Source: Epithemia pelagica (lineage: Eukaryota; Protista; Bacillariophyta). Taken from it: a stretch of 64,000 nt of DNA. Shown here piece after piece: positions 435 to 50,400 of this stretch; within the stretch, counting starts at the first letter, position 1, and each line of letters starts with the position of its first letter. Under the pieces are notes generated by a model that saw only the letters and a program-made list of their open reading frames with translations, was not told the DNA's origin and searched no databases. Location of the stretch: assembly GCA_946965045.2 (NCBI GenBank), contig OX337234.1, positions 124,001 through 188,000 of the forward strand, in the 5' to 3' direction. The translations under genes were made by a program, and so were the position numbers.

Positions 435-2019
435 ATGAGCAAGGTTCAGTTTGATGCAGAAGCACCAGCGGAGGAAGTTCCGATTGTGGCTATGGACGAC
501 AACGACCATGAAGAGGAGGAGGACGAAGAACCAGAAAAGAATTCCAAGAGTTTTAAAGAAAGCATGGCCTCTTTTATCAATGCCGAAGGTCGTCCCATTC
601 AATGGATTTACGATCGATGCAATGGTCATGAACGGGTCATGGATCCGGATTCCAAACCCTGTTGTTGTCTCATGTTCCCCAATGGGTTTTTGAAATTGGC
701 ACCTGGTAAGAGAAAGAAAGTGACTGATGACTTGTGTGTGTGTGTGTGTGTTTGTTTGTCCTTGTTTGTTGTGTGTCGTCGAGCGAGGTTTGTGACATGC
801 TTTTGCATTGGTTTGTTGGACTACATCTTCTGATTCGTTATGGTCGTTCCACCATTGTTTGTGTTTGCTTTCACACAGGCTTGTTGGAGTCGAATCCCTT
901 TATGGAATGTTTTGGTCGCATTGGCTTTATTCATCCCGAATGGTTCCAGGTGCGCAAGGTGATTTTTTTGGTGGCCATGCTCATGAGTACCATTGGTTGG
1001 TCCTGCATCTTGTTGACCGACTTGAGTATTTCCAAGGATTTCAAAGTCTTGCAACATTTTCATTTTAGCAAGGGCGACGTCAAATACGGCTTTGTCGAAA
1101 GCGAAAATGGCAACTTGTCGGGCCTCGTCGAAGGCAGCACTCGCCTCTATGTGGGCTTGTCCGCCGTGGCCTGGGAACAAACCGTCATTAACGTGACCTT
1201 TGAAGATATTGACGCCATTGTCAATGCCAACCCCGGCATTACCGAAGAGGAATTTCGTCGCGATTTCGTGGATCAATTCAAGACCAAGAATCAGTTTGTC
1301 ACGGGCTTTGATGAATTTTGTGATGGAGATTCGCGGGTCTGGTTCGTCGAAGAAGACCAATGTGACAAGTGCGAAGAGGCTTCGACCAAAATGATTCGCA
1401 GGTACGTACGCGTGTGTTGTTGTTGTTGGAAAACAATCATGTGTATTGGAGTTACCCCTGTTCTTCTTTTTGTTCTCATCCTAATCGTTGCACCAATGCA
1501 AATAGTATCATCATGGCGACTGTCTTTTACTTTTTTACCTTCAAGAACGATTGGCTTCGCTTCTGGGTGAATTACGATGTCAATTGTCAAAAGTTCATGT
1601 CCGTCGCTGTCGCCTGCATTACGGTCGGATTGGCCCTCCGCACCTTTTTTACCTACCGGAACGAATGTTTTGATTCCTTTCACGACGGAGACAATTGCTT
1701 TTTCATCAATGGGACCCGTGTGGACTGTACCATTTATGATACCATTGCCGATGACGATACCGTACCACTCACGCCGGAAGAAGAAGAATTGTTGGCGAGT
1801 GTTTCCACAGCCAATTTGGATTGGGATGCTGGTCCGTGTTATATTTTGTTGGGCGGTGCCGTCTTTATTCGACTCTTTAGCATGTTGTGCAACTTGACCG
1901 TACCCACCCCGCCCATTACCCGCAATCGCGAAATGCAATGGGAATACGAACGCATCGCCCAAGAACAAGATGCCAAGGAACCGAATTTGCGTAAAAGCGA
2001 ATACTTTGCGCCGTGGTAA
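435..2019 (+). CDS. Multi-pass membrane protein of unknown function; exons 435-705, 879-1401, 1506-2019
   Basis: Three ORF-track segments join in frame through GT..AG introns (CCTG|gtaag..cacag|GC; CGCAG|gtacg..aatag|TATC). Four hydrophobic segments (FLVAMLMSTIGWSCILL, IIMATVFYFF, VAVACITVGLAL, YILLGGAVFIRLF). Family not recognised. Confidence 0.75.
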
Positions 2020-40260: not shown

Positions 40261-41744
40261 TTGTTTGTTTGTCTTGTGTCGATTTGTGGGTGCAAACCAA
40301 AATCCGAAGCCTCGGTATAGGTGACCACCTATTAGTCGTATGTACGTCGTCCGCAAACTGTCCCCCCAATGGAGATTTTTTTCTCGATTCAATTCCTATT
40401 TTCCATAAAAAATCAGAAAGGACACGCCGGCATATTCTTGTCACATTTCAAATCAGCTTGAGCGGCCCAGCGTGCATGACAGTTGCCGTTGGTGGTTGGT
40501 GCACCAATTCCGCATACACTCTATAAAAAAACAAACAAACCTCCATTACAGCGGCCATGTCCATGGCAATTCTTGCAATGGCATGATTTTTCAGCTTCCA
40601 TGCTACCCAGGTACGTCAAGAAAGACAGAGCTGCGATTGGGCTAAGGACAAGCATCTCAATAGTCCCTCCCTGTTGTTTTTGTTTGCATACACCCCTTGA
40701 GCCCCATTTTCTGGACTCGTTGCAACGTCTCACTTTTCACCAGTCCAATTTCGCTTGTAGTCTTTATGATTGATTCATTTGTAGCCCTTTTACTCTGATA
40801 CAAGTCTAGGTAGAATTCCTGTTCTATATTTTATCATAGGGGTAAATATCAAGGTCAATGGTGGTGTCCTGCTCTACCAGGGATTCTCTTGTCTTGTTAT
40901 TCTTCTCCTTCTCCTTGTCTTCACCTTGAAGAAGATACAGCAAACACTAAGAATTTGTCTCAGCGACCATTAAAGTGGTGACAATCAGCCTCATGATGTA
41001 GTTGCCATCTACAACTTGGATTACTACTCCTAAGAGTAAGAAGAAGAAACCAAATCGTCCCCTACCTAGTAGACAACTTGAACCATGGATGTGACATGCC
41101 CTACAATGAGAAAATGGGCGAAAACACTACCAATCTATCAATCAGGGTCTGGAATTCAAAAAGTGGGACTTTAATGACTTTAGGGAATGTAACTTAAATT
41201 TAGCTTGAATTAAGCCATTCAATTGAAATCCTCCTCCTTTACTTTCATTGAATTTCACACCACTCAACTCAATACCGATTTTTTCTTGGATTCACTGTTC
41301 CGATTCAAGTCTCATCATCTCAGACGGGGAATGTCAATTCCCTAATTCAATTCCCAATTCTCTAAAATAGACACTTCCCAATTCCATTCAATTCACTTTA
41401 TCAGACGATATCAATTCCCAATCCAATCCAATTCCTTCTTACTCACTATAAGAATTTGAGAATCCAATCAATTTTCTCCTACGCACAGATGGAATTACCA
41501 TTCTCCCCCCAATGTGTCATGTGAATTACGTTTCTATACAATATCACACAGTGACCCTACCTTCAACCGCCTCATCTTTGTGACTTGTGACACTCTCTTA
41601 CCTCTCACCTCTACCGTCCATCCACCAATCCTTCAACAGTTCATTGTCTGTTGCAGCTTGCAACACATGTTGTCTGGCTTGATTGTGCGTCTTAATCATC
41701 TTCAAAGCCCAGCATCCTTGTCCACCCTGTCTGGATCTACCATC

Positions 41745-44700
41745 ATGTCAACACAACCGACGATGGCAGAACAAGAGGAGACACCCCCGGCTCATCCCAC
41801 ACAAGCAGAGAACCCAGACCCTCCACCTGCACAGCAAGACGAGAACCCACCCGCTGCTTTAGCCCCCCAAGGGAACAACAATCAACAGAATAGGCAACAC
41901 CCTACCCAAGCCCAACGAACCGAAGCAATTCATCAAGAAATCAAGAAAGAGAAAGACTATGTCCCCTTCCTCAAAAGTCCACCGAGAGAGCATTTCAAGA
42001 ATCTGAATACCTACTGGGGAACAGTGAGACACTTGGACTTTTGCCAGTTAACAGAATTACAAGCAAGACTTGACACCAAAGAAGTTAGCAAAATGGAAGG
42101 TATTTCTCGATGCTTTGCTGTACTCAACCAAGCATCAAAAGAGGACCAAACAGCACCCAAAAAGTCATGGGGATCCATATGTAAGCGTCTTGTGGTGTGC
42201 CCGATTTGCTTTGAAGACCCAGAGAAGTCTTTTTTCGCCTCTACCATCCTCTGTGGTGTCAGCAAGCAGAAGAAAAGTGGCTCCTCTTCGAATGTTAGCC
42301 AACATATGGATTCTTTCCATCCGCATGTGAAAGAAGAAATGGAACGAAAAAAAAAATTGGACCGAAGTCCAATGTAGAAAGCAACCAACCACTTATGACA
42401 TCCTACAAGGGTTCCATGATGTCAAAGGACGAGGCTAGAATCAAGTTTCAACAATCAATCTACCAGTTTGTCAACGACAACGGCTTACCCACTTCAACAG
42501 TGGAAAAGAAGTCCTTCCGAGCTATGCTGGAATTCGCCATTCTTAACGCCCAGAAGCTGTCGACAAAAGATTGTGTCATGAGCAACAAAGACATCATACG
42601 CAAGCGACTTGATTCCTACAACAATTTTCTCCAAACTGTTTCCTCCCTATGCCTGAATGTCCGGCTGATTGACCCCAGGAATTGCGTGTTTTACACGATT
42701 CCCGTAGGTCTCTGCAAAACAGACGGCCACACAGCAGCCCAAGTGGCGACCCACACACTAAAAATCCTCACAACCGTTGGAATTATGCAGTCTGACCTCT
42801 CCTCTTCCGTAAACGACAATACAAATTCGGCAGTCCTTGCCGGAAAGTACATTGTGGGAAATCAGACTGGAGGAAAGTGCGATATGCATCGTGCGGAATT
42901 AATTCTTAAGCACGCCACCGGCTTGGCTGTACGACGAAGGGGGGGAAGGGTAATCGACCAGTTTCCCGGATTTGTGGACACATACAAGAAAGCCTTGAAG
43001 TTAGCTTCAATCCTGATGACGAAGAGAAAGAAGAGATTCCAGGCATTGAGGGACTACGCAACAAAAAATCACCAAGTTGTAGTGGAGATCCGTATGCCGA
43101 ACACAACCAGGGTTCTCGGATGCGCTCTCACATTCCATGATCTCCTACGTGATAAGTACGTCATGGATGACTACAATTCACAAGAGTTTTCTGTAGACAA
43201 AGACTTCCGCGAAAATTATCTGTCCAAGGAGGACTGGCAGGCCATAGCAGAATTCGAAGGAATTCTTTCTCCACTCAAGAAATGCGCCATGTCCTTACAA
43301 GCAGACGATCCTTCCTCTGCTGCAGGCTCTTTGCTGGAAATCTTTGGTTGCCATCATGGAATCAAATACCACAAAGACAACGGTGTCTCTGTTCTGCTTG
43401 TGAACCCCACAGAACTAGACACAGAGTTCCAAAGTTGGGATGCCAGGTTAACCATAGAGAAACTCCGTTCCAAAAGGAAAAATATCAAGTTTGCAGATTT
43501 ACTGCCCGCCTCACGGATGCTTATTAACCGGCTTCTACGTGAATTTTGCACCTACATGATGAATGGTGACGACGTCCATGCAGAGAATGCTATCTGCGGT
43601 CATCCGTTTCTCTGCTACATGGCACCGTACATCCTGAAAAAAATCAAGATCTACGACGACTACGACGTCTCCAGAATCCAAAAACAATTTGTTGATGACA
43701 TGGTAGCAAAGTTTTCCACTCCTGAAAGGTTGGCAATGAATGGACCAGCCCCAATGGCTGGGACAGCCAATGAGGAGGTTGTAGATATAGAAGACGACGA
43801 CTCGGATGATGACGATGTGTTCAATATTTTTCGGAATCATGGAGAGAATGAAGACAGCATGTGCGTGGAAAACAACAATCTTAACACGTTGGACGAGCAG
43901 AAGAAGAGCTTTAGAGAACAATGTAACAACGAATTCAAGGGGTTCAAGGATTACTGTCAGCGCATTATCCACAGTTCCTGGGAATCGTTGATTAGGGAGT
44001 ATCCCACCGTTCTTTTTTCTGAAAAGTCACCAAAATGGACGCCTCAAGAAAAGAAAAAGTTCAGACGGGCATGTAATGATCAAGATTTCAACAGTGTGGG
44101 CAAGTATTTTGATGTCTTACAGTGGTGGCAGGCGAACAAGAGTAATTTCAGGATGATTTTCCCAAGTGCCCTCGTGTGGCTCTCGAAGCCTTCTACAAAC
44201 GCTTTCCAAGAGAGGATATTTTCTTTCTCCTCATGGTTTGATAGCAATAGATTGATGAGGAACGAGCTCAAGAAACATTTCGAGATTCGCACCATGGAGA
44301 TGGTAACAAGAAAGGTTCGTGGAGAGATTGAGGTTAATGAAATGACCTGGAAAAGAAATCTCAACACACCACAGAGAACGAGGACGAAGCGCAAACCAGG
44401 GGTAAGGCCGAGGAGCAAGCTAGGAGTAATGCCACACAGCGCCAGATAAGTCAACAGGAGCAACTGCAGAACCAACAAAGAACAGCTTCAAGCCAAGAGA
44501 GAGACGAGGCCCAGGCCGAAATAGAGGCGGAAGTAATCTCCGTGGTTGATGACGATGACGATGAAGACAACAATGGAACTGACTACGGCAGTGGCGAAGA
44601 TAATGAAGAACAAAATGAAGCTGTTGAGGAACATGAGCAGGGAACCGATGAAGTCTCGGTATGGGATTCCATTGCTGAAGGGACCACTCAAGGTCATATG

Positions 44701-45408
44701 AAACGTCTGAAAACCATTTTGAAGGGTGTAAAAAATATGCAGAAGCACCACAAGGCCCGGGAACAAATTGAACTTGATGAAGACGAAGGGAACGATGGGA
44801 TTGTTGGTTCAGAATACGAATACAAATGCAGTGATTCTAATCTGGATTTGGTACAAAAATTCGATGACGTAGTGCTCATTGATATAGTGGACGAAGGGGA
44901 CAAGGAACAAATGGAATGCATGGGTCGTCTTGGGAAAGATAAGGACCCATTTCAGTCAGATAGTGATGCTTGCATCATTGAGGCGGTCAAACTACAACAA
45001 ATGAACTTGATGGCTGGTTCTAGTATTTCTGCATCTTCAAATCGAACAATGAATCCCACTACATCGACGACAGATCAAGGCAACAGTACCAGTGCAAGTG
45101 TTCAAGGAAGTGTGACAGGAATCGTTTCGACGACAACTCCTGCTACACACAGTACCACACCAACAACCCAAAGATCCACCACCTTATCAAAAAGGAAGGC
45201 AACAACTCAAACGAGTGCATCTTCCAAAAGAGTACGCCAACAATCCATTCAAGAATCGGCATCTCGAACAAAGTCCAAGTCCAAATCGTCGAGAGCAAAG
45301 AAACCACCTCCTGCAGAACACATCGGAGAGCAGCAAGAAGAACAACGACAACAACAACGATGGACAAGTCCGCGACGCCGCACCAATAACAGTAATGAAG
45401 ACCACTGA
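41745..45408 (+). pseudogene. hAT transposase, broken by frameshifts at the A10 run (42347-42356) and at ~44340
   Basis: BED-like Zn finger (CPIC..SSSNVSQHMDSFH); SVNDNT and CDMHRAEL motifs; hATC dimerisation domain (LQWWQ..PSTNAFQERIFS). The acidic/Ser-Thr tail ORF 44542-45408 continues in another frame from ~44340. I cannot find the first catalytic Asp (DxW) motif before CLNVRLIDP, so an internal deletion is possible. Confidence 0.85.
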
Positions 45409-45551
45409 TAAATACAGAACATGACGGAACAGAAAACAAAAAAGACTACATACGACTACATACAAGAACGACTACATACAAGATACATGCGAGAACCAAA
45501 AAGAAAAAGAACAAACAAGGAAAAACAGATAGTAACTAATAAGAAATTGAC

Positions 45552-47485
45552 TCATGAGGAACTGCAATAGGACCGATACAAATGAAGGAAATTGTTGTGT
45601 AGGTTGTAGATCTCTTTGCTGTCTAAGAGTTTCTTCTTATGGTCTTTGTCAAGACGACGGACTGTGAAATCCATCTGGATTTCTGAACATTGGTGACGTG
45701 TCTTTGGGTCTTGTATTAGTTGCCCGAGCGCTCCAAACATTGGGTTGACCCATTCCCAGTACTCCTTTGGAATCCAAGACTCCAACAAAGCCGAGCACAT
45801 GTCTGGGTCGTTGCATGATTTGGGGATCCATCCCAGGGCTCGAGAGCAGCGATGTACATGCACATCAGTTGGAATTCCGTCAATTCTTTGAAATGCAAAT
45901 GCCAAGACAATTGTGGCAGTCTTGTACCCAACCCCATGCAGACACATTAGTTCTTGCACCGTAATGGTTTCTGGTATAATTCCAGAATGCCGTTGGATGA
46001 AGTAGTCTGCTGCGTTGACGATAGCCTCAGCATTCTTATAATATAGACCAGTCTCTGCCAATAGGGAACATACAGCGTCCATCCCATAGTTGAGTGCAAT
46101 GTCACTGGTTGCCCGACTAGAGACAAACCCACATTGGAACAAAGTGGGTACCACTTTAGCTAATTGTTTGTCGCTTGTGTTGGAACTCATAAGAATCACA
46201 ACCAAGCACATGAAGGCTCGGTTGGATTCTGGTGAGAGATGGTCGTTAATCCAGTCTTCCCAACTGTCTCTTGGAGCTTCCAGACCTTTGGAAAGGAAAT
46301 GTTCATGAAGCTTTTTCAAATACTGCAAGTCAACAACCCTCTTTCTCAAAGTCTGTTCAGAGATTGTGGGGGGGGGGGGGAACTTTTTGTTTTGTTGTAC
46401 AAGGAGAGATCATTGGGTTTCAAACGAACAGGTTGACCAGGCATGTGTCGAATATTGTTCTTATCTTTGTAGCAGATTTGTCGCCTTGCTCTGGATGCTT
46501 TAATGAGGAGGTTGGCGGCGGTGGCATATTGTTTGCGGGTCATAATCTGAGAATATGGTGGGTTGCTGTGTTTGGCAACAGAAGATCGCTTTGTCGGAGT
46601 GTCAGGCTTTGGCTTTGCAACAGCGATTTCTTGTGATGATGAGTTGTGTTTTGCATTGACTGGAGATGGTTTTGTCGATTGAGATGGTGATATGGGTGGA
46701 GATGGTCCATCAATGGGGAAGGAATTAGCAGGTTCAATCGAATCTGGAGGAGTAGTTACTGGAGTAGACAGAATGGTTGGATCTCCTTGGGATATAATCT
46801 TGTTGGATATTTGGGACAACATTGATGTAGCAATGCATTGTAAGAGAGGATCGATAGAGACTGGGTGAATTGTTCTGTTGTGTGATGTAGAAACAGAAAT
46901 GAGTGCATCACAATGTATCATCCACTCCAGAGTATAGTCTTCCATCGATTGAACATTGAGGTCTTCTTGAGTATCAATTTGCCCATTCAACAATACATAT
47001 TCAATTGCTTCTTTGTATCCAATGTCTTCGGTGCCGACTTCATACATAGGTTGACAGCTGCAGTGGAGGTGCAATACTGGGAAATCATCTTTAGGCCGGC
47101 TCATTTTGAACTTGGGGTTGCTCAACAGGGAGTTGGTGGGAATTTCTTGCGAGGGATATAAACCATGGTGAACCAGTAATGAGATAAGGTAGATGGATTG
47201 GTCCATAGAAAGAGATGGCTTGATCTGACATGGATGGCTTGTCAGAATATCAAGAGAGCACGAAGTGTAGCAAATTGAAGCATCTTCTCGAATGAGCCAA
47301 ACAAGAATGGTGTCTTGTATTGCTTCCATTCTCAAATCAAAAGACATGGTTGACAAGTCTGGGAGTTCTTCTCGAATGAATTTGAAAAATGAGTGTGGAG
47401 CTTGAGAGAGAGAAACAACAGGAGAGCATATGCTTGACAAAGATATTGTTGGGCGACAACTACTTGGGTATTGTTGGGAGCTCAT
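45552..47485 (-). CDS. HhH-GPD / endonuclease III-like DNA glycosylase with a long unknown N-terminal region; frameshift in a C13 run (46368-46380)
   Basis: ORF 46349-45552: ILMSSNTSD, HhH motif LMCLHGVGYKTA (catalytic Lys) and GIPTDVHVHR (catalytic Asp); no C-terminal 4-Cys Fe-S motif. ORF 47485-46346 joins it if the C run is 11 or 14 nt (..SSPPP-TISEQTLRKRVVDLQY). Confidence 0.8.
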
Positions 47486-50400
47486 TGAGACAATAGGTAC
47501 GATAAAATGTGACGACTGAGAGTATACGATGTACAATGGTGTAAGATGGAAGACATCAGGAATATGGACAAGCTCCACAAAGAAGTGTGTTGCTGTTTGT
47601 CGATACTAAAACATACAGGCGTACCTAACATCTTCTTAGTTGTATGTTGTACGACTATAATGATGGAGAAAGGATAAGGAGTACAGTGTGTGACTGTGAG
47701 TCATAATTCAGAGAATGAATGGAATTTGTGAATGTGTAATTCATTTGTTCTGAATGGTGGTGTGAATTGGGAATGATTCATTCAATTCAAATTCGTTCGA
47801 AAAGGGAATTGGGATTGGAATTTAATTCCAATTGGTTCGAAAAGGGAATTGGGGATTGAATTCAATTCAAAGGGTATGAAATAGGGGAATAGTAAAGTTA
47901 AGAGAATTTATTGATTGTAAACATAATTGACTTTGGTAATTAAGTTCATTTACTATCCGTAAATTAGTACACTTTCAAGATTAATTCAATTGTGTATATG
48001 TCGTGAAGTGAATCGTTAATTCTTAATTTAAATCTTAACTGATTGGAAAAGTGAATAATCAATCTACATTCAAGTTTAGATGGCACATAAAATGACTTCC
48101 AGACCCTGCTATCAATCCTAAGAAGAAACAGAAGGCACAAACAACAACTGAAAGAAAGACGCGCTCTGTCTACAGTCTACAATGATTCGTCCGCGGTTCA
48201 TGTGCCATGGCCGATGGTCTTACCGGTACCGTGATAGGGCCCTTCTCACGGTTTTTATGAGCTGTCGCTCGCGAGCGTCTGGAATTTGAATCGTGTTGAT
48301 CAGAGGACGCCCGCCAACCTTCAACTGTCACTTGCACGCCGGCCACTCTATATGACGATTTGCTTTTGGGAGATTTTATGGGGGAGAAGGACAGAGTTCT
48401 GTGCGGACGACGTACGTACGGTTTTTAGGTGGTCACCGATACAGAGCCTTTGTGAGCATAATATGGCGCAATGATGAATTTATCTAATGCTCTGTCGTGG
48501 CATTACTCCATTTTGAATTTTGAAGGTGGCAGGTCCGATTGCCTATGTCCGCAAACGTGTCCGAAGAGCTGGCTCTACAACGGTATTGGTGTCCACGACC
48601 CCAAAAACAGTACTCGTGTACTCTTTGAGAGTATAGTGGGCCGAAGTTTCGGATGATTTCAAACTACCGTTCGGAAGGACTCTTGGCAGCAGTTTCCGCA
48701 CCTCATTTTCAAGCGTTCCATGAGATTAGGATCATAGTATGATTTTGAATAAAGTATCATTGGTATCGACTGGTTTTATGTTTATTCGTGACCCGATTCA
48801 AACCCGATCCGTCGTCTATAGCCTTGAATTGTAGACCACAAAATCATCATTGCAGGCTTCCCGCAGCGAATTTCGACTACAATACACGCTCGAAAACTTC
48901 AAACTTCTGCTCCTCCATGGTAGGCCTCGTTCGCGATTTTGGTCTTTATCCTCTTGGGTGTCCAATTCTGCTGTACATGGTCTGTACGTGGCCGGTGAGG
49001 GTCCCTACCAAGTATCTAAGAGTCACATCTCAGCGAATCGGAAATCCATAATTGATCGGGCCACTGCTGCTGCCGGATCTTCCGAGTCGAGACAAGGGCG
49101 AGAAGCCAGAGGACAGAATAGAGAACCGAGGACAACTCGCTCACTTTCTGACAAAAAGTGGGGTGTTGAGGAGTCTCTAGTCTCTCCTCGTTATCTACAA
49201 CTCACTCCATCAGGATCATTTATAGAAACAAATGCATGGGAGTGAGTAGGAGCACCCCAACCCTCCGACTAGGTGTCCGCTTCTTAGCCCCCCAGCCGCT
49301 CTCCGCGACCAACCATTTTAATTTTGGTTTTTTTGCGTTTTTGAAGAAAATTTCGGGTCAAAATGAAAATGATCACGCCGGCCTTCTGGATCACCGTTTT
49401 GAAATTTTGTGAGCAGGCGTGCGCACTTTGACCGTTGGTCTTCCCCATTCTTGATTGTCGTCCCAAGTTGCGACCCACATTATTTTCACTACGCACCTTT
49501 TGACATGGATAATGGACATGCACCATCACAATGCATTCTCCATCATCTGCACACCATGGACATTTGACATATAGACCATAGATAGTGTTTTGCTCTACCC
49601 CATCCTTTCTTTGTTTTTTCTAGGAGAAGTGTGGTTGTTTCTAGTGTTTGTGTCCGTTTAAAAGTGGACCCTCCTCCACAACACCGTGCCGTTGCCGTAG
49701 GCTTGTCTCTTTGCAACCACATACAGTCCTATTTTAGAATACGTCTCTTTCTAGTTGCGTTATGGAGCATATAGAGTGTAGAGTCCCCTGCACTGCTGGG
49801 AAAGACAAGTCATGCTCATGGCAACAAAAAAAGAACAACAGGAGCAGGTCGACATCACAATCCACTAAAGACCCAAACTGAGCGACAGCAGAGGAAAAAT
49901 GGATGGCTTCCTCCACTTATCCTACCTACTCCTAATTGAGGTCTATAGCTCTATTTTGTCCTATAAGAATCCTACAAATGATGCCAGCAGCCCCACATGG
50001 CATCGACCAAAATGGATGTTACATGGCACAAACAAATGACACACTATGGCAACTGGCAACGTAGTGAGAGCCTACAACTAAACATTGTCCATTCCAATGC
50101 AAGTATCTGCCATTCCAGAACTTACCATGATGGATGTGCAGTGACAAAGATGAGATGAGATGGCCAGGGACGAAGCATGCCGTTTTTGGTGTTGGTTTGG
50201 TCATTGCCTCGTTTTGTTGCCTGCATCGATTTTGTGATTTGTGACCCGTGAACTCACTGAGAACACTATTTTGAGTCTTGTTGAGCAGAACGCCTGCCAT
50301 CGTCCAACTGTCACATCACGCCAGCCTTTCCACCGATGGATGTGAAATTTCCATTCATTTTTTTGTCTGTGAGATTGGGTTTGTCTTGCCCGAACAGACG

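What the first reader, a model, noticed from the sequence alone, without database searches (positions are those of the whole stretch)
41143..48108. hAT transposon carrying its own HhH-GPD (endonuclease III-type) DNA glycosylase
Seen: between intact TIRs and an identical 8-bp TSD lie two convergent genes, the transposase (+) and a ~640-aa ORF (-). The C-terminal ~265 aa of the latter is an HhH-GPD glycosylase retaining catalytic Lys (HGVGYK) and Asp (PTDVHVH) but lacking the Fe-S cysteines. Known: hAT elements normally encode only a transposase; the HhH-GPD superfamily includes the plant 5mC-removing DEMETER/ROS1 enzymes; diatoms methylate transposons; some transposons encode anti-silencing proteins (Arabidopsis VANC) or travel with base-modifying enzymes (fungal TET/JBP). 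Inference: a transposon-borne base-excision enzyme that could erase silencing marks, or process hairpin and gap intermediates of hAT transposition. I know of no described hAT family with this cargo, but could not search.
Basis: partly seen in the sequence, partly recalled or inferred. Interest (0 to 1): 0.9.

Follow-up and report, generated by a model that had tools for sequence, protein, structure and literature searches.

The report
Dead copy of glycosylase-carrying hAT transposon
This is a recently inserted but broken copy of a cut-and-paste (hAT) jumping-gene family, said to be from a diatom, whose intact members all carry a conserved DNA base-removal enzyme beside the transposase, a cargo I found in no paper.

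Summary
The ends are real: 16-nt terminal inverted repeats (1 mismatch) and an identical 8-bp target-site duplication, CTATCAAT. Contigs from public runs of the same organism also hold the empty site, so the insertion is polymorphic.

The two convergent genes are real, but both are broken in this copy.
- Transposase: it lacks 102 bp that encode the first catalytic Asp motif (CHDIWQG), and it is split into three ORFs by two 1-bp frameshifts.
- Glycosylase: it is frameshifted by a C8-to-C13 expansion, so there is no continuous ~640-aa ORF.

Two intact sister copies (L013, L014; 7074 bp, other TSDs) encode a 1281-aa transposase and a 596-685-aa glycosylase.

Five diverged subfamilies in the same assembly keep the pair; four have complete TIRs and perfect TSDs. 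The glycosylases form one clade (SH-aLRT 98) apart from 106 other Nth-like representatives. They keep the catalytic Lys and Asp, lack the Fe-S cysteines (0 of 28), and carry an N-terminal duplicated domain with no known relative. Between subfamilies synonymous sites are saturated while the glycosylase domain changes as slowly as the transposase core.

The function is untested; I favour countering methylation-based silencing or decay. This scan had already noted the family many times on other DNA of this genome.

The parts
41135..41142 (.). Left target-site duplication, CTATCAAT
   Evidence: Read directly. It is identical to 48109-48116. Empty-site contigs carry one copy of it.
41143..41158 (+). 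Left terminal inverted repeat, CAGGGTCTGGAATTCA
   Evidence: pair I17, 16 nt, 94%. Homology to copies at other loci starts exactly here.
41335..41419 (-). Left subterminal repeats: three copies of GGGAATTG, candidate transposase-binding sites
   Evidence: 5 of the 7 window matches lie in the two subterminal regions, in mirrored orientation.
41514..42377 (+). Transposase pseudogene, piece 1: N-terminal part with a CPxC...H....H zinc-finger-like motif (42198-42323). The Met used by the intact 1281-aa ORF is at 41667.
   Evidence: tblastn of intact transposases matches 41535-42344 in one frame. The Cys/His columns are invariant.
42347..42356 (+). Frameshift 1: A10 run where intact copies have A11. 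It separates piece 1 from the catalytic core. The same state is in copy L001.
   Evidence: Public-run contigs show both states (table 4).
42395..44449 (+). Transposase pseudogene, piece 2: catalytic core and hAT C-terminal dimerisation region. The QERIFS motif (catalytic Glu) is at 44198-44224.
   Evidence: Pfam PF05699. Match to Hermes transposase over the W..ER.FS motif. tblastn 42311-44371.
42663..42664 (+). Junction of a 102-bp in-frame deletion, private to this copy. It removes 34 codons including ICHDIWQGH, the first catalytic Asp motif.
   Evidence: The motif is present and its Asp invariant in all five intact transposases. Public-run contigs carry the 102 bp (records 1 and 8).
44345..44346 (+). 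Frameshift 2: a 1-bp deletion (ACCCTG to ACCTG), private to this copy. It causes a stop at 44449 and cuts off the ~320-aa tail.
   Evidence: Contigs of X1-X3 carry the extra C (table 4).
44542..45408 (+). Transposase pseudogene, piece 3: acidic and Ser/Thr-rich C-terminal tail, out of frame here and in frame in intact copies.
   Evidence: tblastn 44599-45249 in a third frame. The ORF is a single 1281-aa frame in L013 and L014.
45552..46349 (-). Glycosylase pseudogene, 3' piece: Nth-derived HhH-GPD domain (Pfam match 45768-46199). Lys codon 45921-45923, Asp codon 45864-45866. No Fe-S cysteines.
46368..46380 (-). C13 homopolymer (G13 on the + strand) where intact copies have 8 bases (C8, or C7 preceded by G). 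The +5 nt frameshift breaks the glycosylase gene.
   Evidence: Contigs of the public runs break here with long G runs (table 7).
46346..47485 (-). Glycosylase pseudogene, 5' piece. It holds the N-terminal duplicated domain (about 46775-47485), which has no detectable relatives, and a linker with the invariant TR...Y...RH.PG motif. The likely start is MSSQQ at 47485; the gene caller used MSFDL at 47347.
   Evidence: The model of the domain has pLDDT 89. No fold or family match.
47804..47851 (+). Right subterminal repeats: two copies of GGGAATTG
48093..48108 (-). Right terminal inverted repeat (CAGGGTCTGGAAGTCA on the - strand)
   Evidence: The T/G asymmetry at position 13 is shared by copy L001, so it is not private decay of this copy.
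48109..48116 (.). Right target-site duplication, CTATCAAT

Best explanation
Shown. Positions 41143-48108 are a non-autonomous, decayed copy of a high-copy hAT family. Intact members are 7074 bp long. They encode a 1281-aa transposase and, convergently, a 596-685-aa protein. That protein has a duplicated N-terminal domain of unknown kind, a conserved linker, and an endonuclease III/NTH1-derived HhH-GPD glycosylase. The glycosylase keeps the catalytic Lys and Asp but has lost the 4Fe-4S cluster. The gene was acquired once, has stayed inside the element through deep diversification, and is conserved as strongly as the transposase core. In this copy both genes are dead. The insertion is still polymorphic.

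Inferred. This copy descends from a lineage that was already defective and was moved in trans by intact relatives. The protein is a bifunctional glycosylase/AP-lyase that works for the element. Most likely it excises methylated cytosine, or its deaminated or oxidised products, from element DNA, and so counters methylation-based silencing or the mutational decay that follows it. The N-terminal domain would give targeting. No step of this mechanism has been tested.
For: - Boundaries: TIRs and TSD. Homology to copies at other loci stops exactly at the TIRs.
- Mobility: three other copies of this subfamily and four diverged elements each have their own perfect 8-bp TSD.
- Empty site: contigs in X1-X3 join 41105-41134 directly to 48109 onward with one CTATCAAT.
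- Defects in this copy.
- Shared ancestry with L001: 31 shared variant sites and the shared A10 frameshift, at a different locus.
- Pairing: the pair is kept in five diverged subfamilies with glycosylase-domain identity of about 42-66%.
- Co-divergence: glycosylase identity tracks transposase identity, 0.66/0.57/0.45 against 0.62/0.51/0.41.
- Constraint: between subfamilies pS is 0.79-0.90 (saturated). pN is 0.23-0.41 in the glycosylase domain and 0.26-0.45 in the transposase core.
- One clade: SH-aLRT 98 against 106 other Nth-like representatives.
- Catalytic residues: Lys and Asp are invariant in 22 representatives.
- Fold: NTHL1/EndoIII, TM by target 0.70-0.72.
- Fe-S motif: present in 0 of 28 clade members and 65 of 116 other representatives.
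- Methylation signature: 19 of 30 private C>T/G>A changes lie in CpG against 14% expected, p 6e-10. CpG observed/expected is 0.63-0.80 in elements and 0.81-0.96 in flanks.
- Context: Arabidopsis Spm TnpA needs the host glycosylases ROS1/DML2/DML3 for anti-silencing (bioRxiv 10.64898/2026.08.24.746577). Fungal DNA transposons, hAT7 among them, carry TET/JBP dioxygenases (PMC12730594).
Against: - No biochemical, methylome or clear expression data exist. The only RNA-library trace is one 141-nt contig in a marine sediment metatranscriptome, which could be DNA carry-over.
- The enzyme derives from Nth, whose known substrates are oxidised pyrimidines, not from DME/ROS1. Its match to ROS1 is far weaker (E 0.024 against 5e-20 for NTHL1).
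- CpG decay in the copies shows that the elements are not kept free of methylation damage.
- Linkage to a hAT transposase is shown only in one assembly (ERZ21939226). The environmental contigs with clade members are too short to show it.
- Part of the CpG depletion may be compositional, since GpC is also somewhat low in the elements.
Confidence: 0.5

Rival explanations
1. The glycosylase serves transposition itself. Its AP-lyase/dRP-lyase activity or its DNA binding would help process donor-site hairpins, fill the 8-bp gaps at the target, or nick DNA so that the excised donor is repaired from a sister copy. This would raise copy number rather than counter silencing.
For: The gene is as constrained as the transposase core and co-diverges with it. 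The catalytic Lys implies lyase chemistry. The conserved N-terminal domain and linker could mediate contact with the transposase or the element ends.
Against: hAT elements are generally described as encoding only a transposase and complete transposition with host repair (general knowledge; PMC8721813 abstract). Nothing here links the enzyme to the ends or to the transposase. An intact base-recognition fold is kept, which a pure lyase role would not need.
Confidence: 0.2
2. The enzyme protects the element's sequence rather than its expression. It would remove T or U opposite G, or oxidised bases, that arise in methylated or heterochromatic element DNA, or undo a host base-editing defence. That would slow mutational decay of the master copies.
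For: Private substitutions are dominated by C>T/G>A at CpG, so deamination is the main threat to these elements. A thermostable T:G thymine glycosylase of the same fold is among the structural matches (1kea).
Against: The Nth-family T:G glycosylases I recall are monofunctional and lack the Lys, whereas this clade keeps it (the comparison is from memory). A diffusible repair enzyme would benefit the whole genome, which gives weak selection for carriage by the element.
Confidence: 0.15
3. The glycosylase is a passenger: a captured host gene fragment that hitch-hikes without benefit to the element.
For: DNA transposons do capture host sequences. In this copy the gene is dead and the element still moved, since the insertion is polymorphic.
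Against: There is a single origin and retention across subfamilies whose synonymous sites are saturated. Full-length ORFs of about 600 aa are intact, the catalytic residues are invariant, and pN is as low as in the transposase core. No cellular relative is closer than about 35% identity among 1.84 billion representatives.
Confidence: 0.05
4. One reading: this particular element is an intact autonomous transposon with a working transposase and a ~640-aa glycosylase.
For: Both regions contain long open frames, and the ends and TSD are perfect.
Against: There are two frameshifts and a 34-codon deletion of the first catalytic Asp motif in the transposase, and a +5 frameshift in the glycosylase, all relative to two intact sister copies.
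Confidence: 0.03

Closest known systems
hAT superfamily DNA transposons (Ac, Hermes, Tol2)
   Same: 8-bp TSDs, short TIRs starting CAG, subterminal short repeats, and a transposase with the hAT C-terminal dimerisation region and the W..ER.FS motif that matches Hermes.
   Different: The transposase is about twice the usual size (1281-1345 aa) and has a long acidic, Ser/Thr-rich tail. The element carries a second, convergent, conserved gene. The sequence is very divergent: only the C-terminal motif is detectable by Pfam or PDB search.
Endonuclease III / NTH1 (Nth family of HhH-GPD glycosylases)
   Same: Best sequence and fold match (NTHL1 E 5e-20; EndoIII TM 0.70-0.72). The HhH motif, catalytic Lys and Asp are conserved.
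   Different: There is no 4Fe-4S cluster (0 of 28). The Gln of the Nth S-x-Q-T-x-D motif is Ser or Asn. A ~330-aa N-terminal extension holds a domain without relatives. The gene is transposon-borne and forms a separate clade.
Fungal DNA transposons carrying TET/JBP dioxygenase genes, including hAT7 (PMC12730594)
   Same: A DNA transposon, hAT among them, that carries a DNA-base-modifying enzyme as a second gene. The suspected purpose is countering cytosine-methylation silencing.
   Different: The enzyme class differs (oxidation against base excision), as do the host (fungi against the reported diatom) and the TSD length (7 bp in hAT7 against 8 bp here). The TET/JBP genes were passed among many superfamilies; here one clade stays with one hAT lineage.
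Plant DEMETER/ROS1 5mC glycosylases, and the transposon proteins that exploit them (Spm TnpA; VANC of VANDAL elements)
   Same: Bifunctional HhH-GPD chemistry (Lys and Asp). Spm TnpA anti-silencing needs ROS1/DML2/DML3 (bioRxiv 10.64898/2026.08.24.746577), so base-excision demethylation is a route that transposons are known to use.
   Different: Those glycosylases are host genes with an Fe-S cluster and DME-specific domains. The match here is weak (E 0.024). The plant elements recruit the host enzyme, whereas this family would carry its own. Activity on 5mC is untested.

Membership tests
hAT superfamily | 8-bp target-site duplication | tested here: met
   CTATCAAT on both sides. There are seven other perfect 8-bp TSDs at other copies and subfamilies. 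The empty site holds one copy.
hAT superfamily | Short terminal inverted repeats | tested here: met
   16 nt with 1 mismatch. CAGGGT..GAA termini are shared by all subfamilies.
hAT superfamily | Transposase with the hAT C-terminal dimerisation domain | tested here: met
   PF05699 scores 22.0 bits in the window and 21.4-30.9 bits in intact relatives, against a cut-off of 21.4. A profile of five transposases hits Hermes at E 1.7e-4.
hAT superfamily | Complete DDE catalytic triad in this copy | tested here: not met
   The CHDIW motif, whose Asp is invariant in intact relatives, is removed by the 102-bp deletion. The QERIFS Glu is present at 44198-44224. The family meets the feature; this copy does not.
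hAT superfamily | N-terminal BED-type zinc finger | tested here: inconclusive
   C178, C181, H213 and H218 are invariant in five transposases. No Pfam zf-BED hit appears at E up to 1.
Endonuclease III / Nth (HhH-GPD) | HhH-GPD fold with helix-hairpin-helix and catalytic Asp | tested here: met
   PF00730 E 4.7e-9. Fold match to NTHL1 and EndoIII. The Asp is invariant.
Endonuclease III / Nth (HhH-GPD) | Catalytic Lys of bifunctional glycosylase/AP-lyases | tested here: met
   The Lys of GYK aligns with the Lys of the NTHL1 GPK motif. K474 is invariant in 22 representatives. Activity is untested.
Endonuclease III / Nth (HhH-GPD) | C-terminal 4Fe-4S cluster (Cx6Cx2Cx5C) | tested here: not met
   0 of 28 clade members have the motif, against 65 of 116 other Nth-like representatives. 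The clade is therefore a derived offshoot, not a canonical Nth.
DEMETER/ROS1 5mC glycosylases | Closest similarity to DME/ROS1, with their Fe-S cluster and specific flanking domains | tested here: not met
   ROS1 chains match at E 0.024-0.12, far weaker than NTHL1. There is no Fe-S motif. The N-terminal domain has no match to anything.
DEMETER/ROS1 5mC glycosylases | Excision of 5-methylcytosine | not testable with these tools
   This needs an enzyme assay.

The most novel reading that the evidence does not exclude
The family's Fe-S-less Nth derivative is a transposon-borne 5-methylcytosine (or 5mC-derivative) glycosylase. That would be a second origin of base-excision DNA demethylation, independent of plant DME/ROS1. 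Its previously unseen duplicated N-terminal domain would direct it to the element's own subterminal repeats, so the element would switch itself back on.
Probability: 0.2. Interest if true: 0.9.

Novelty: new variant of a known kind. Interest (0 to 1): 0.7.

Why it matters
Cut-and-paste transposons are generally thought to rely on host repair and to escape silencing through DNA-binding proteins or by recruiting host enzymes. Here a whole hAT lineage has kept its own base-excision enzyme for a very long time. That makes a testable case of a mobile element that chemically edits DNA bases for its own benefit.

It would also give a compact Nth-type glycosylase without an Fe-S cluster, and an uncharacterised DNA-associated domain, for biochemistry.

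This copy adds two points. Members with both genes dead still insert, because the insertion is polymorphic. And the family's copies decay mainly at CpG, which ties the family to cytosine methylation.

Tried and rejected
- JGI metagenome scan with the clade alignment: only three ordinary EndoIII relatives at 28-35% identity.
- Viral contig scan: nothing.
- Environmental contigs with clade members (L010-L012): no recognisable TIR or transposase, and too short to judge.
- P0053/L006: an unrelated HhH-GPD protein with no hAT neighbour.
- P0050: a multi-exon host gene on a 49-Mb chromosome.
- P0045: a Logan contig with the same convergent layout, but no DNA was served.
- N-terminal domain: no Pfam hit and no significant Foldseek match in PDB or AFDB. 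The best VIA Z is 6.0, below the tool's stated noise level. The diatom-specific DUF6824 comes up weakly in two libraries but has no sequence support, so I do not claim it. The language-model search gave no lead.
- Programmed frameshift at the A run (42347-42356): rejected, because intact copies read straight through with A11.
- TIR-like match at 650-661: no other homology to any element, so it is treated as chance.
- dN/dS within the subfamily is about 1, as expected for neutral decay after insertion, so it says nothing about function.
Full report
**1. Observation**

The inverted-repeat scan finds arms at 41143-41158 and 48093-48108, 16 nt with one mismatch. The sequence shows CTATCAAT immediately outside both arms.

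Between the arms, the + strand ORF 42395-44449 carries the hAT C-terminal dimerisation domain just above Pfam's cut-off. The - strand ORF 45552-46349 carries an HhH-GPD domain. Its best solved relative is human NTHL1 at E 5e-20. The Lys of HGVGYK aligns with the Lys of the enzyme's GPK motif, and the Asp of PTDVHVH with the Asp of its DTHVH motif.

**2. This copy is broken**

The glycosylase gene is not one ORF. The 410-aa ORF 46346-47578 and the 265-aa ORF 45552-46349 are in different frames and meet at a run of 13 C. A word-based protein search with the 5' ORF returned a 596-aa protein (P0001, 97% identical) that reads straight through the junction.

I fetched its locus (L001) and two more (L013, L014) from the same ENA assembly, ERZ21939226. 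These are copies of the same subfamily at other sites. Homology to the window stops exactly at the TIRs, and each copy has its own perfect 8-bp TSD: GTTGGCAG, CTAACGCC and CTCTTGAT.

L013 and L014 are intact. They are 7074 bp long, with a single 1281-aa transposase ORF and a 596-aa glycosylase ORF. The glycosylase frame is open further upstream, to MSSQQ or MFQYRQ, which gives about 640-685 aa.

Against these two copies the window copy shows the following:
- A10 instead of A11 at 42347-42356. This frameshift is shared with L001.
- A private 102-bp deletion at 42663/42664.
- A private 1-bp deletion at 44345.
- A private +5 expansion of the C run at 46368-46380.
- A 2-bp deletion in the left non-coding part, at 41259.
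- 27 private substitutions.

tblastn with intact transposases from diverged subfamilies matches the window in three successive frames: 41535-42344, 42311-44371 and 44599-45249. This confirms that the three + strand ORFs are pieces of one gene.

The deleted 102 bp encode ...ICHDIWQGH.... The same motif is in the intact transposase of L002, and its Asp is invariant in five intact transposases. By my knowledge of hAT transposases this is the first Asp of the DDE triad. The third motif, QERIFS, survives at 44198-44224 and is the stretch that matches Hermes.

A 7-bp tandem duplication at 41656 is present in L013 and L014 and absent in the window and L001. I could not resolve its polarity.

**3. The insertion is young and polymorphic**

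I laid Logan contigs of three runs of the same (coded) organism on 42300-48150.
- The element sits at word depths of about 1000 and above, and the contigs carry the family consensus: the extra A (in X2 and X3, not in X1), the extra C, and the 102 bp (the last in X1 and X2).
- Many different flanks lie behind 48108.
- In X1, X2 and X3 there are contigs whose fitting part begins at 48109 and whose preceding letters are AATGAGAAAATGGGCGAAAACACTACCAAT. That string is window 41105-41134, the sequence just before the left TSD. These contigs are therefore the empty site with a single CTATCAAT.

An exact empty site points to a pre-insertion allele rather than an excision, because hAT excision usually leaves footprints (my knowledge).

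The window and L001 share 31 variant sites and the A10 frameshift, yet lie at different loci. The simplest reading is that a lineage that was already defective was mobilised in trans. This is inference.

**4. Family level**

An exhaustive HMMER search with the 265-aa domain against 1.84 billion representatives gave 34 hits at E below 1e-30. They are 39-66% identical (apart from a 98% identical near-copy, P0016); the full-length ones run about 415-715 aa with the domain at the C-terminus, and some hits are fragments. After them the scores drop to ordinary Nth-like proteins at about 1e-20 and 30-35% identity.

Three diverged representatives were located. In each, the glycosylase is convergent with a single-ORF hAT transposase of 1282-1345 aa. 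Each pair is enclosed by CAGGGT... TIRs and a perfect, different 8-bp TSD. A fifth subfamily lies next to one of them.

In the alignment of 22 representatives:
- The catalytic Lys and Asp are invariant, along with about 35 other glycosylase-domain positions.
- A linker motif, TR...Y...RH.PG, is invariant or nearly so.
- None of 28 clade members has the Cx6Cx2Cx5C Fe-S motif, against 65 of 116 other representatives.

A quick maximum-likelihood tree puts the 27 clade representatives on one side of a branch (SH-aLRT 98), with P0045 as sister (93), apart from 106 other Nth-like sequences.

Between subfamilies synonymous sites are saturated (pS 0.79-0.90). Non-synonymous divergence is 0.23-0.41 in the glycosylase domain and 0.26-0.45 in the transposase core. 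The two proteins' identities rank alike across pairs. This argues for one capture, co-divergence and purifying selection.

A transposase search returned 30 clusters at 90% identity, one with 205 member sequences. A few of them, and a few clade glycosylases, come from environmental JGI, ENA or Logan contigs. Those contigs are too short to show linkage. The pairing is therefore demonstrated in one genome only.

**5. Structure**

An AlphaFold2 model of P0001 (pLDDT 76) matches NTHL1 and EndoIII structures over the C-terminal domain, with TM by target 0.70-0.72.

The N-terminal 237 residues, modelled from the upstream start, fold confidently (pLDDT 89, pTM 0.77) into two similar beta-beta-alpha-alpha-beta-alpha units. 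The good model of the first strands supports the upstream start. No significant match was found in PDB, AFDB clusters, the ESM Atlas, Pfam or the language-model search.

The position of the Gln in the Nth S-x-Q-T-x-D motif is Ser or Asn in the clade.

**6. Link to methylation (indirect)**

Of the 30 private C>T/G>A changes in four copies, 19 lie in CpG against 14% expected (binomial p 6e-10). In the window copy it is 9 of 16. CpG observed/expected is 0.63-0.80 in seven elements and 0.81-0.96 in their flanks, although GpC is also a little low in the elements. The family thus carries the mark of CpG methylation and deamination.

**7. Mechanism**

Shown: an element-borne, constrained, catalytically complete-looking Nth derivative.

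Inferred: it is a bifunctional glycosylase/AP-lyase acting for the element.
- I rank countering methylation-based silencing or decay first, at about 0.5 with its variants.
- A direct role in transposition or repair comes second, at about 0.2.
- A mere passenger is unlikely.

The literature gives analogues but not this case:
- Fungal transposons, hAT7 among them, carry TET/JBP genes (PMC12730594).
- Spm TnpA needs host ROS1-type glycosylases for anti-silencing (bioRxiv 10.64898/2026.08.24.746577).
- Seven full-text searches found no hAT or other eukaryotic transposon with a glycosylase gene. Repbase and Dfam could not be consulted.

**8. Earlier notes of this scan**

The scan's index holds 83 notes with the words hAT and glycosylase for this genome. 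They include at least eight follow-up reports on other copies, which reached the same family-level reading. I used them as leads only and re-derived the claims above.

New here are the copy-level defects, the empty-site polymorphism, the evidence for mobilisation in trans, the CpG decay spectrum and the N-terminal domain model. A word search of earlier notes for an empty site found none.

**Verdict**

This copy is a dead but recently moved member. The function is untested.

Noticed in passing
window 44568-45342: Contigs of X1-X3 join 44568 to 45342, skipping 773 nt, which is most of the transposase tail. They make up about a tenth of the word depth. This looks like an internal-deletion derivative of the family.
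   Followed up: no
window 43652: One high-depth contig of run X3 lacks 23 nt here, inside the transposase core. A frameshifted variant seems common among copies.
   Followed up: no
window 41335-41419 and 47804-47851: The motif GGGAATTG occurs three times (- strand) near the left end and twice (+ strand) near the right end, with only two more in the other 57 kb. These are candidate transposase-binding subterminal repeats.
   Followed up: partly
L003:1-5427 and L003:6467-13392: Two elements of different subfamilies lie side by side. Each has a glycosylase convergent with a ~1280-aa transposase.
   Followed up: partly
window 45802-45942: A marine sediment metatranscriptome (X7) holds one 141-nt contig 100% identical to the glycosylase domain, flanked by adapter. 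This is weak evidence of expression in nature, or DNA carry-over.
   Followed up: no
window 41656: The intact copies L013 and L014 have a 7-bp tandem duplication (CTTGCAA) just upstream of the Met of their 1281-aa ORF. The window and L001 lack it and read open further upstream. Which state is ancestral is unresolved.
   Followed up: partly
window 650-661: A TIR-like CAGGGTTTGGAA on the - strand, the same 12 letters as the TIR of subfamily L002. There is no further homology to any element, so it is probably chance.
   Followed up: yes
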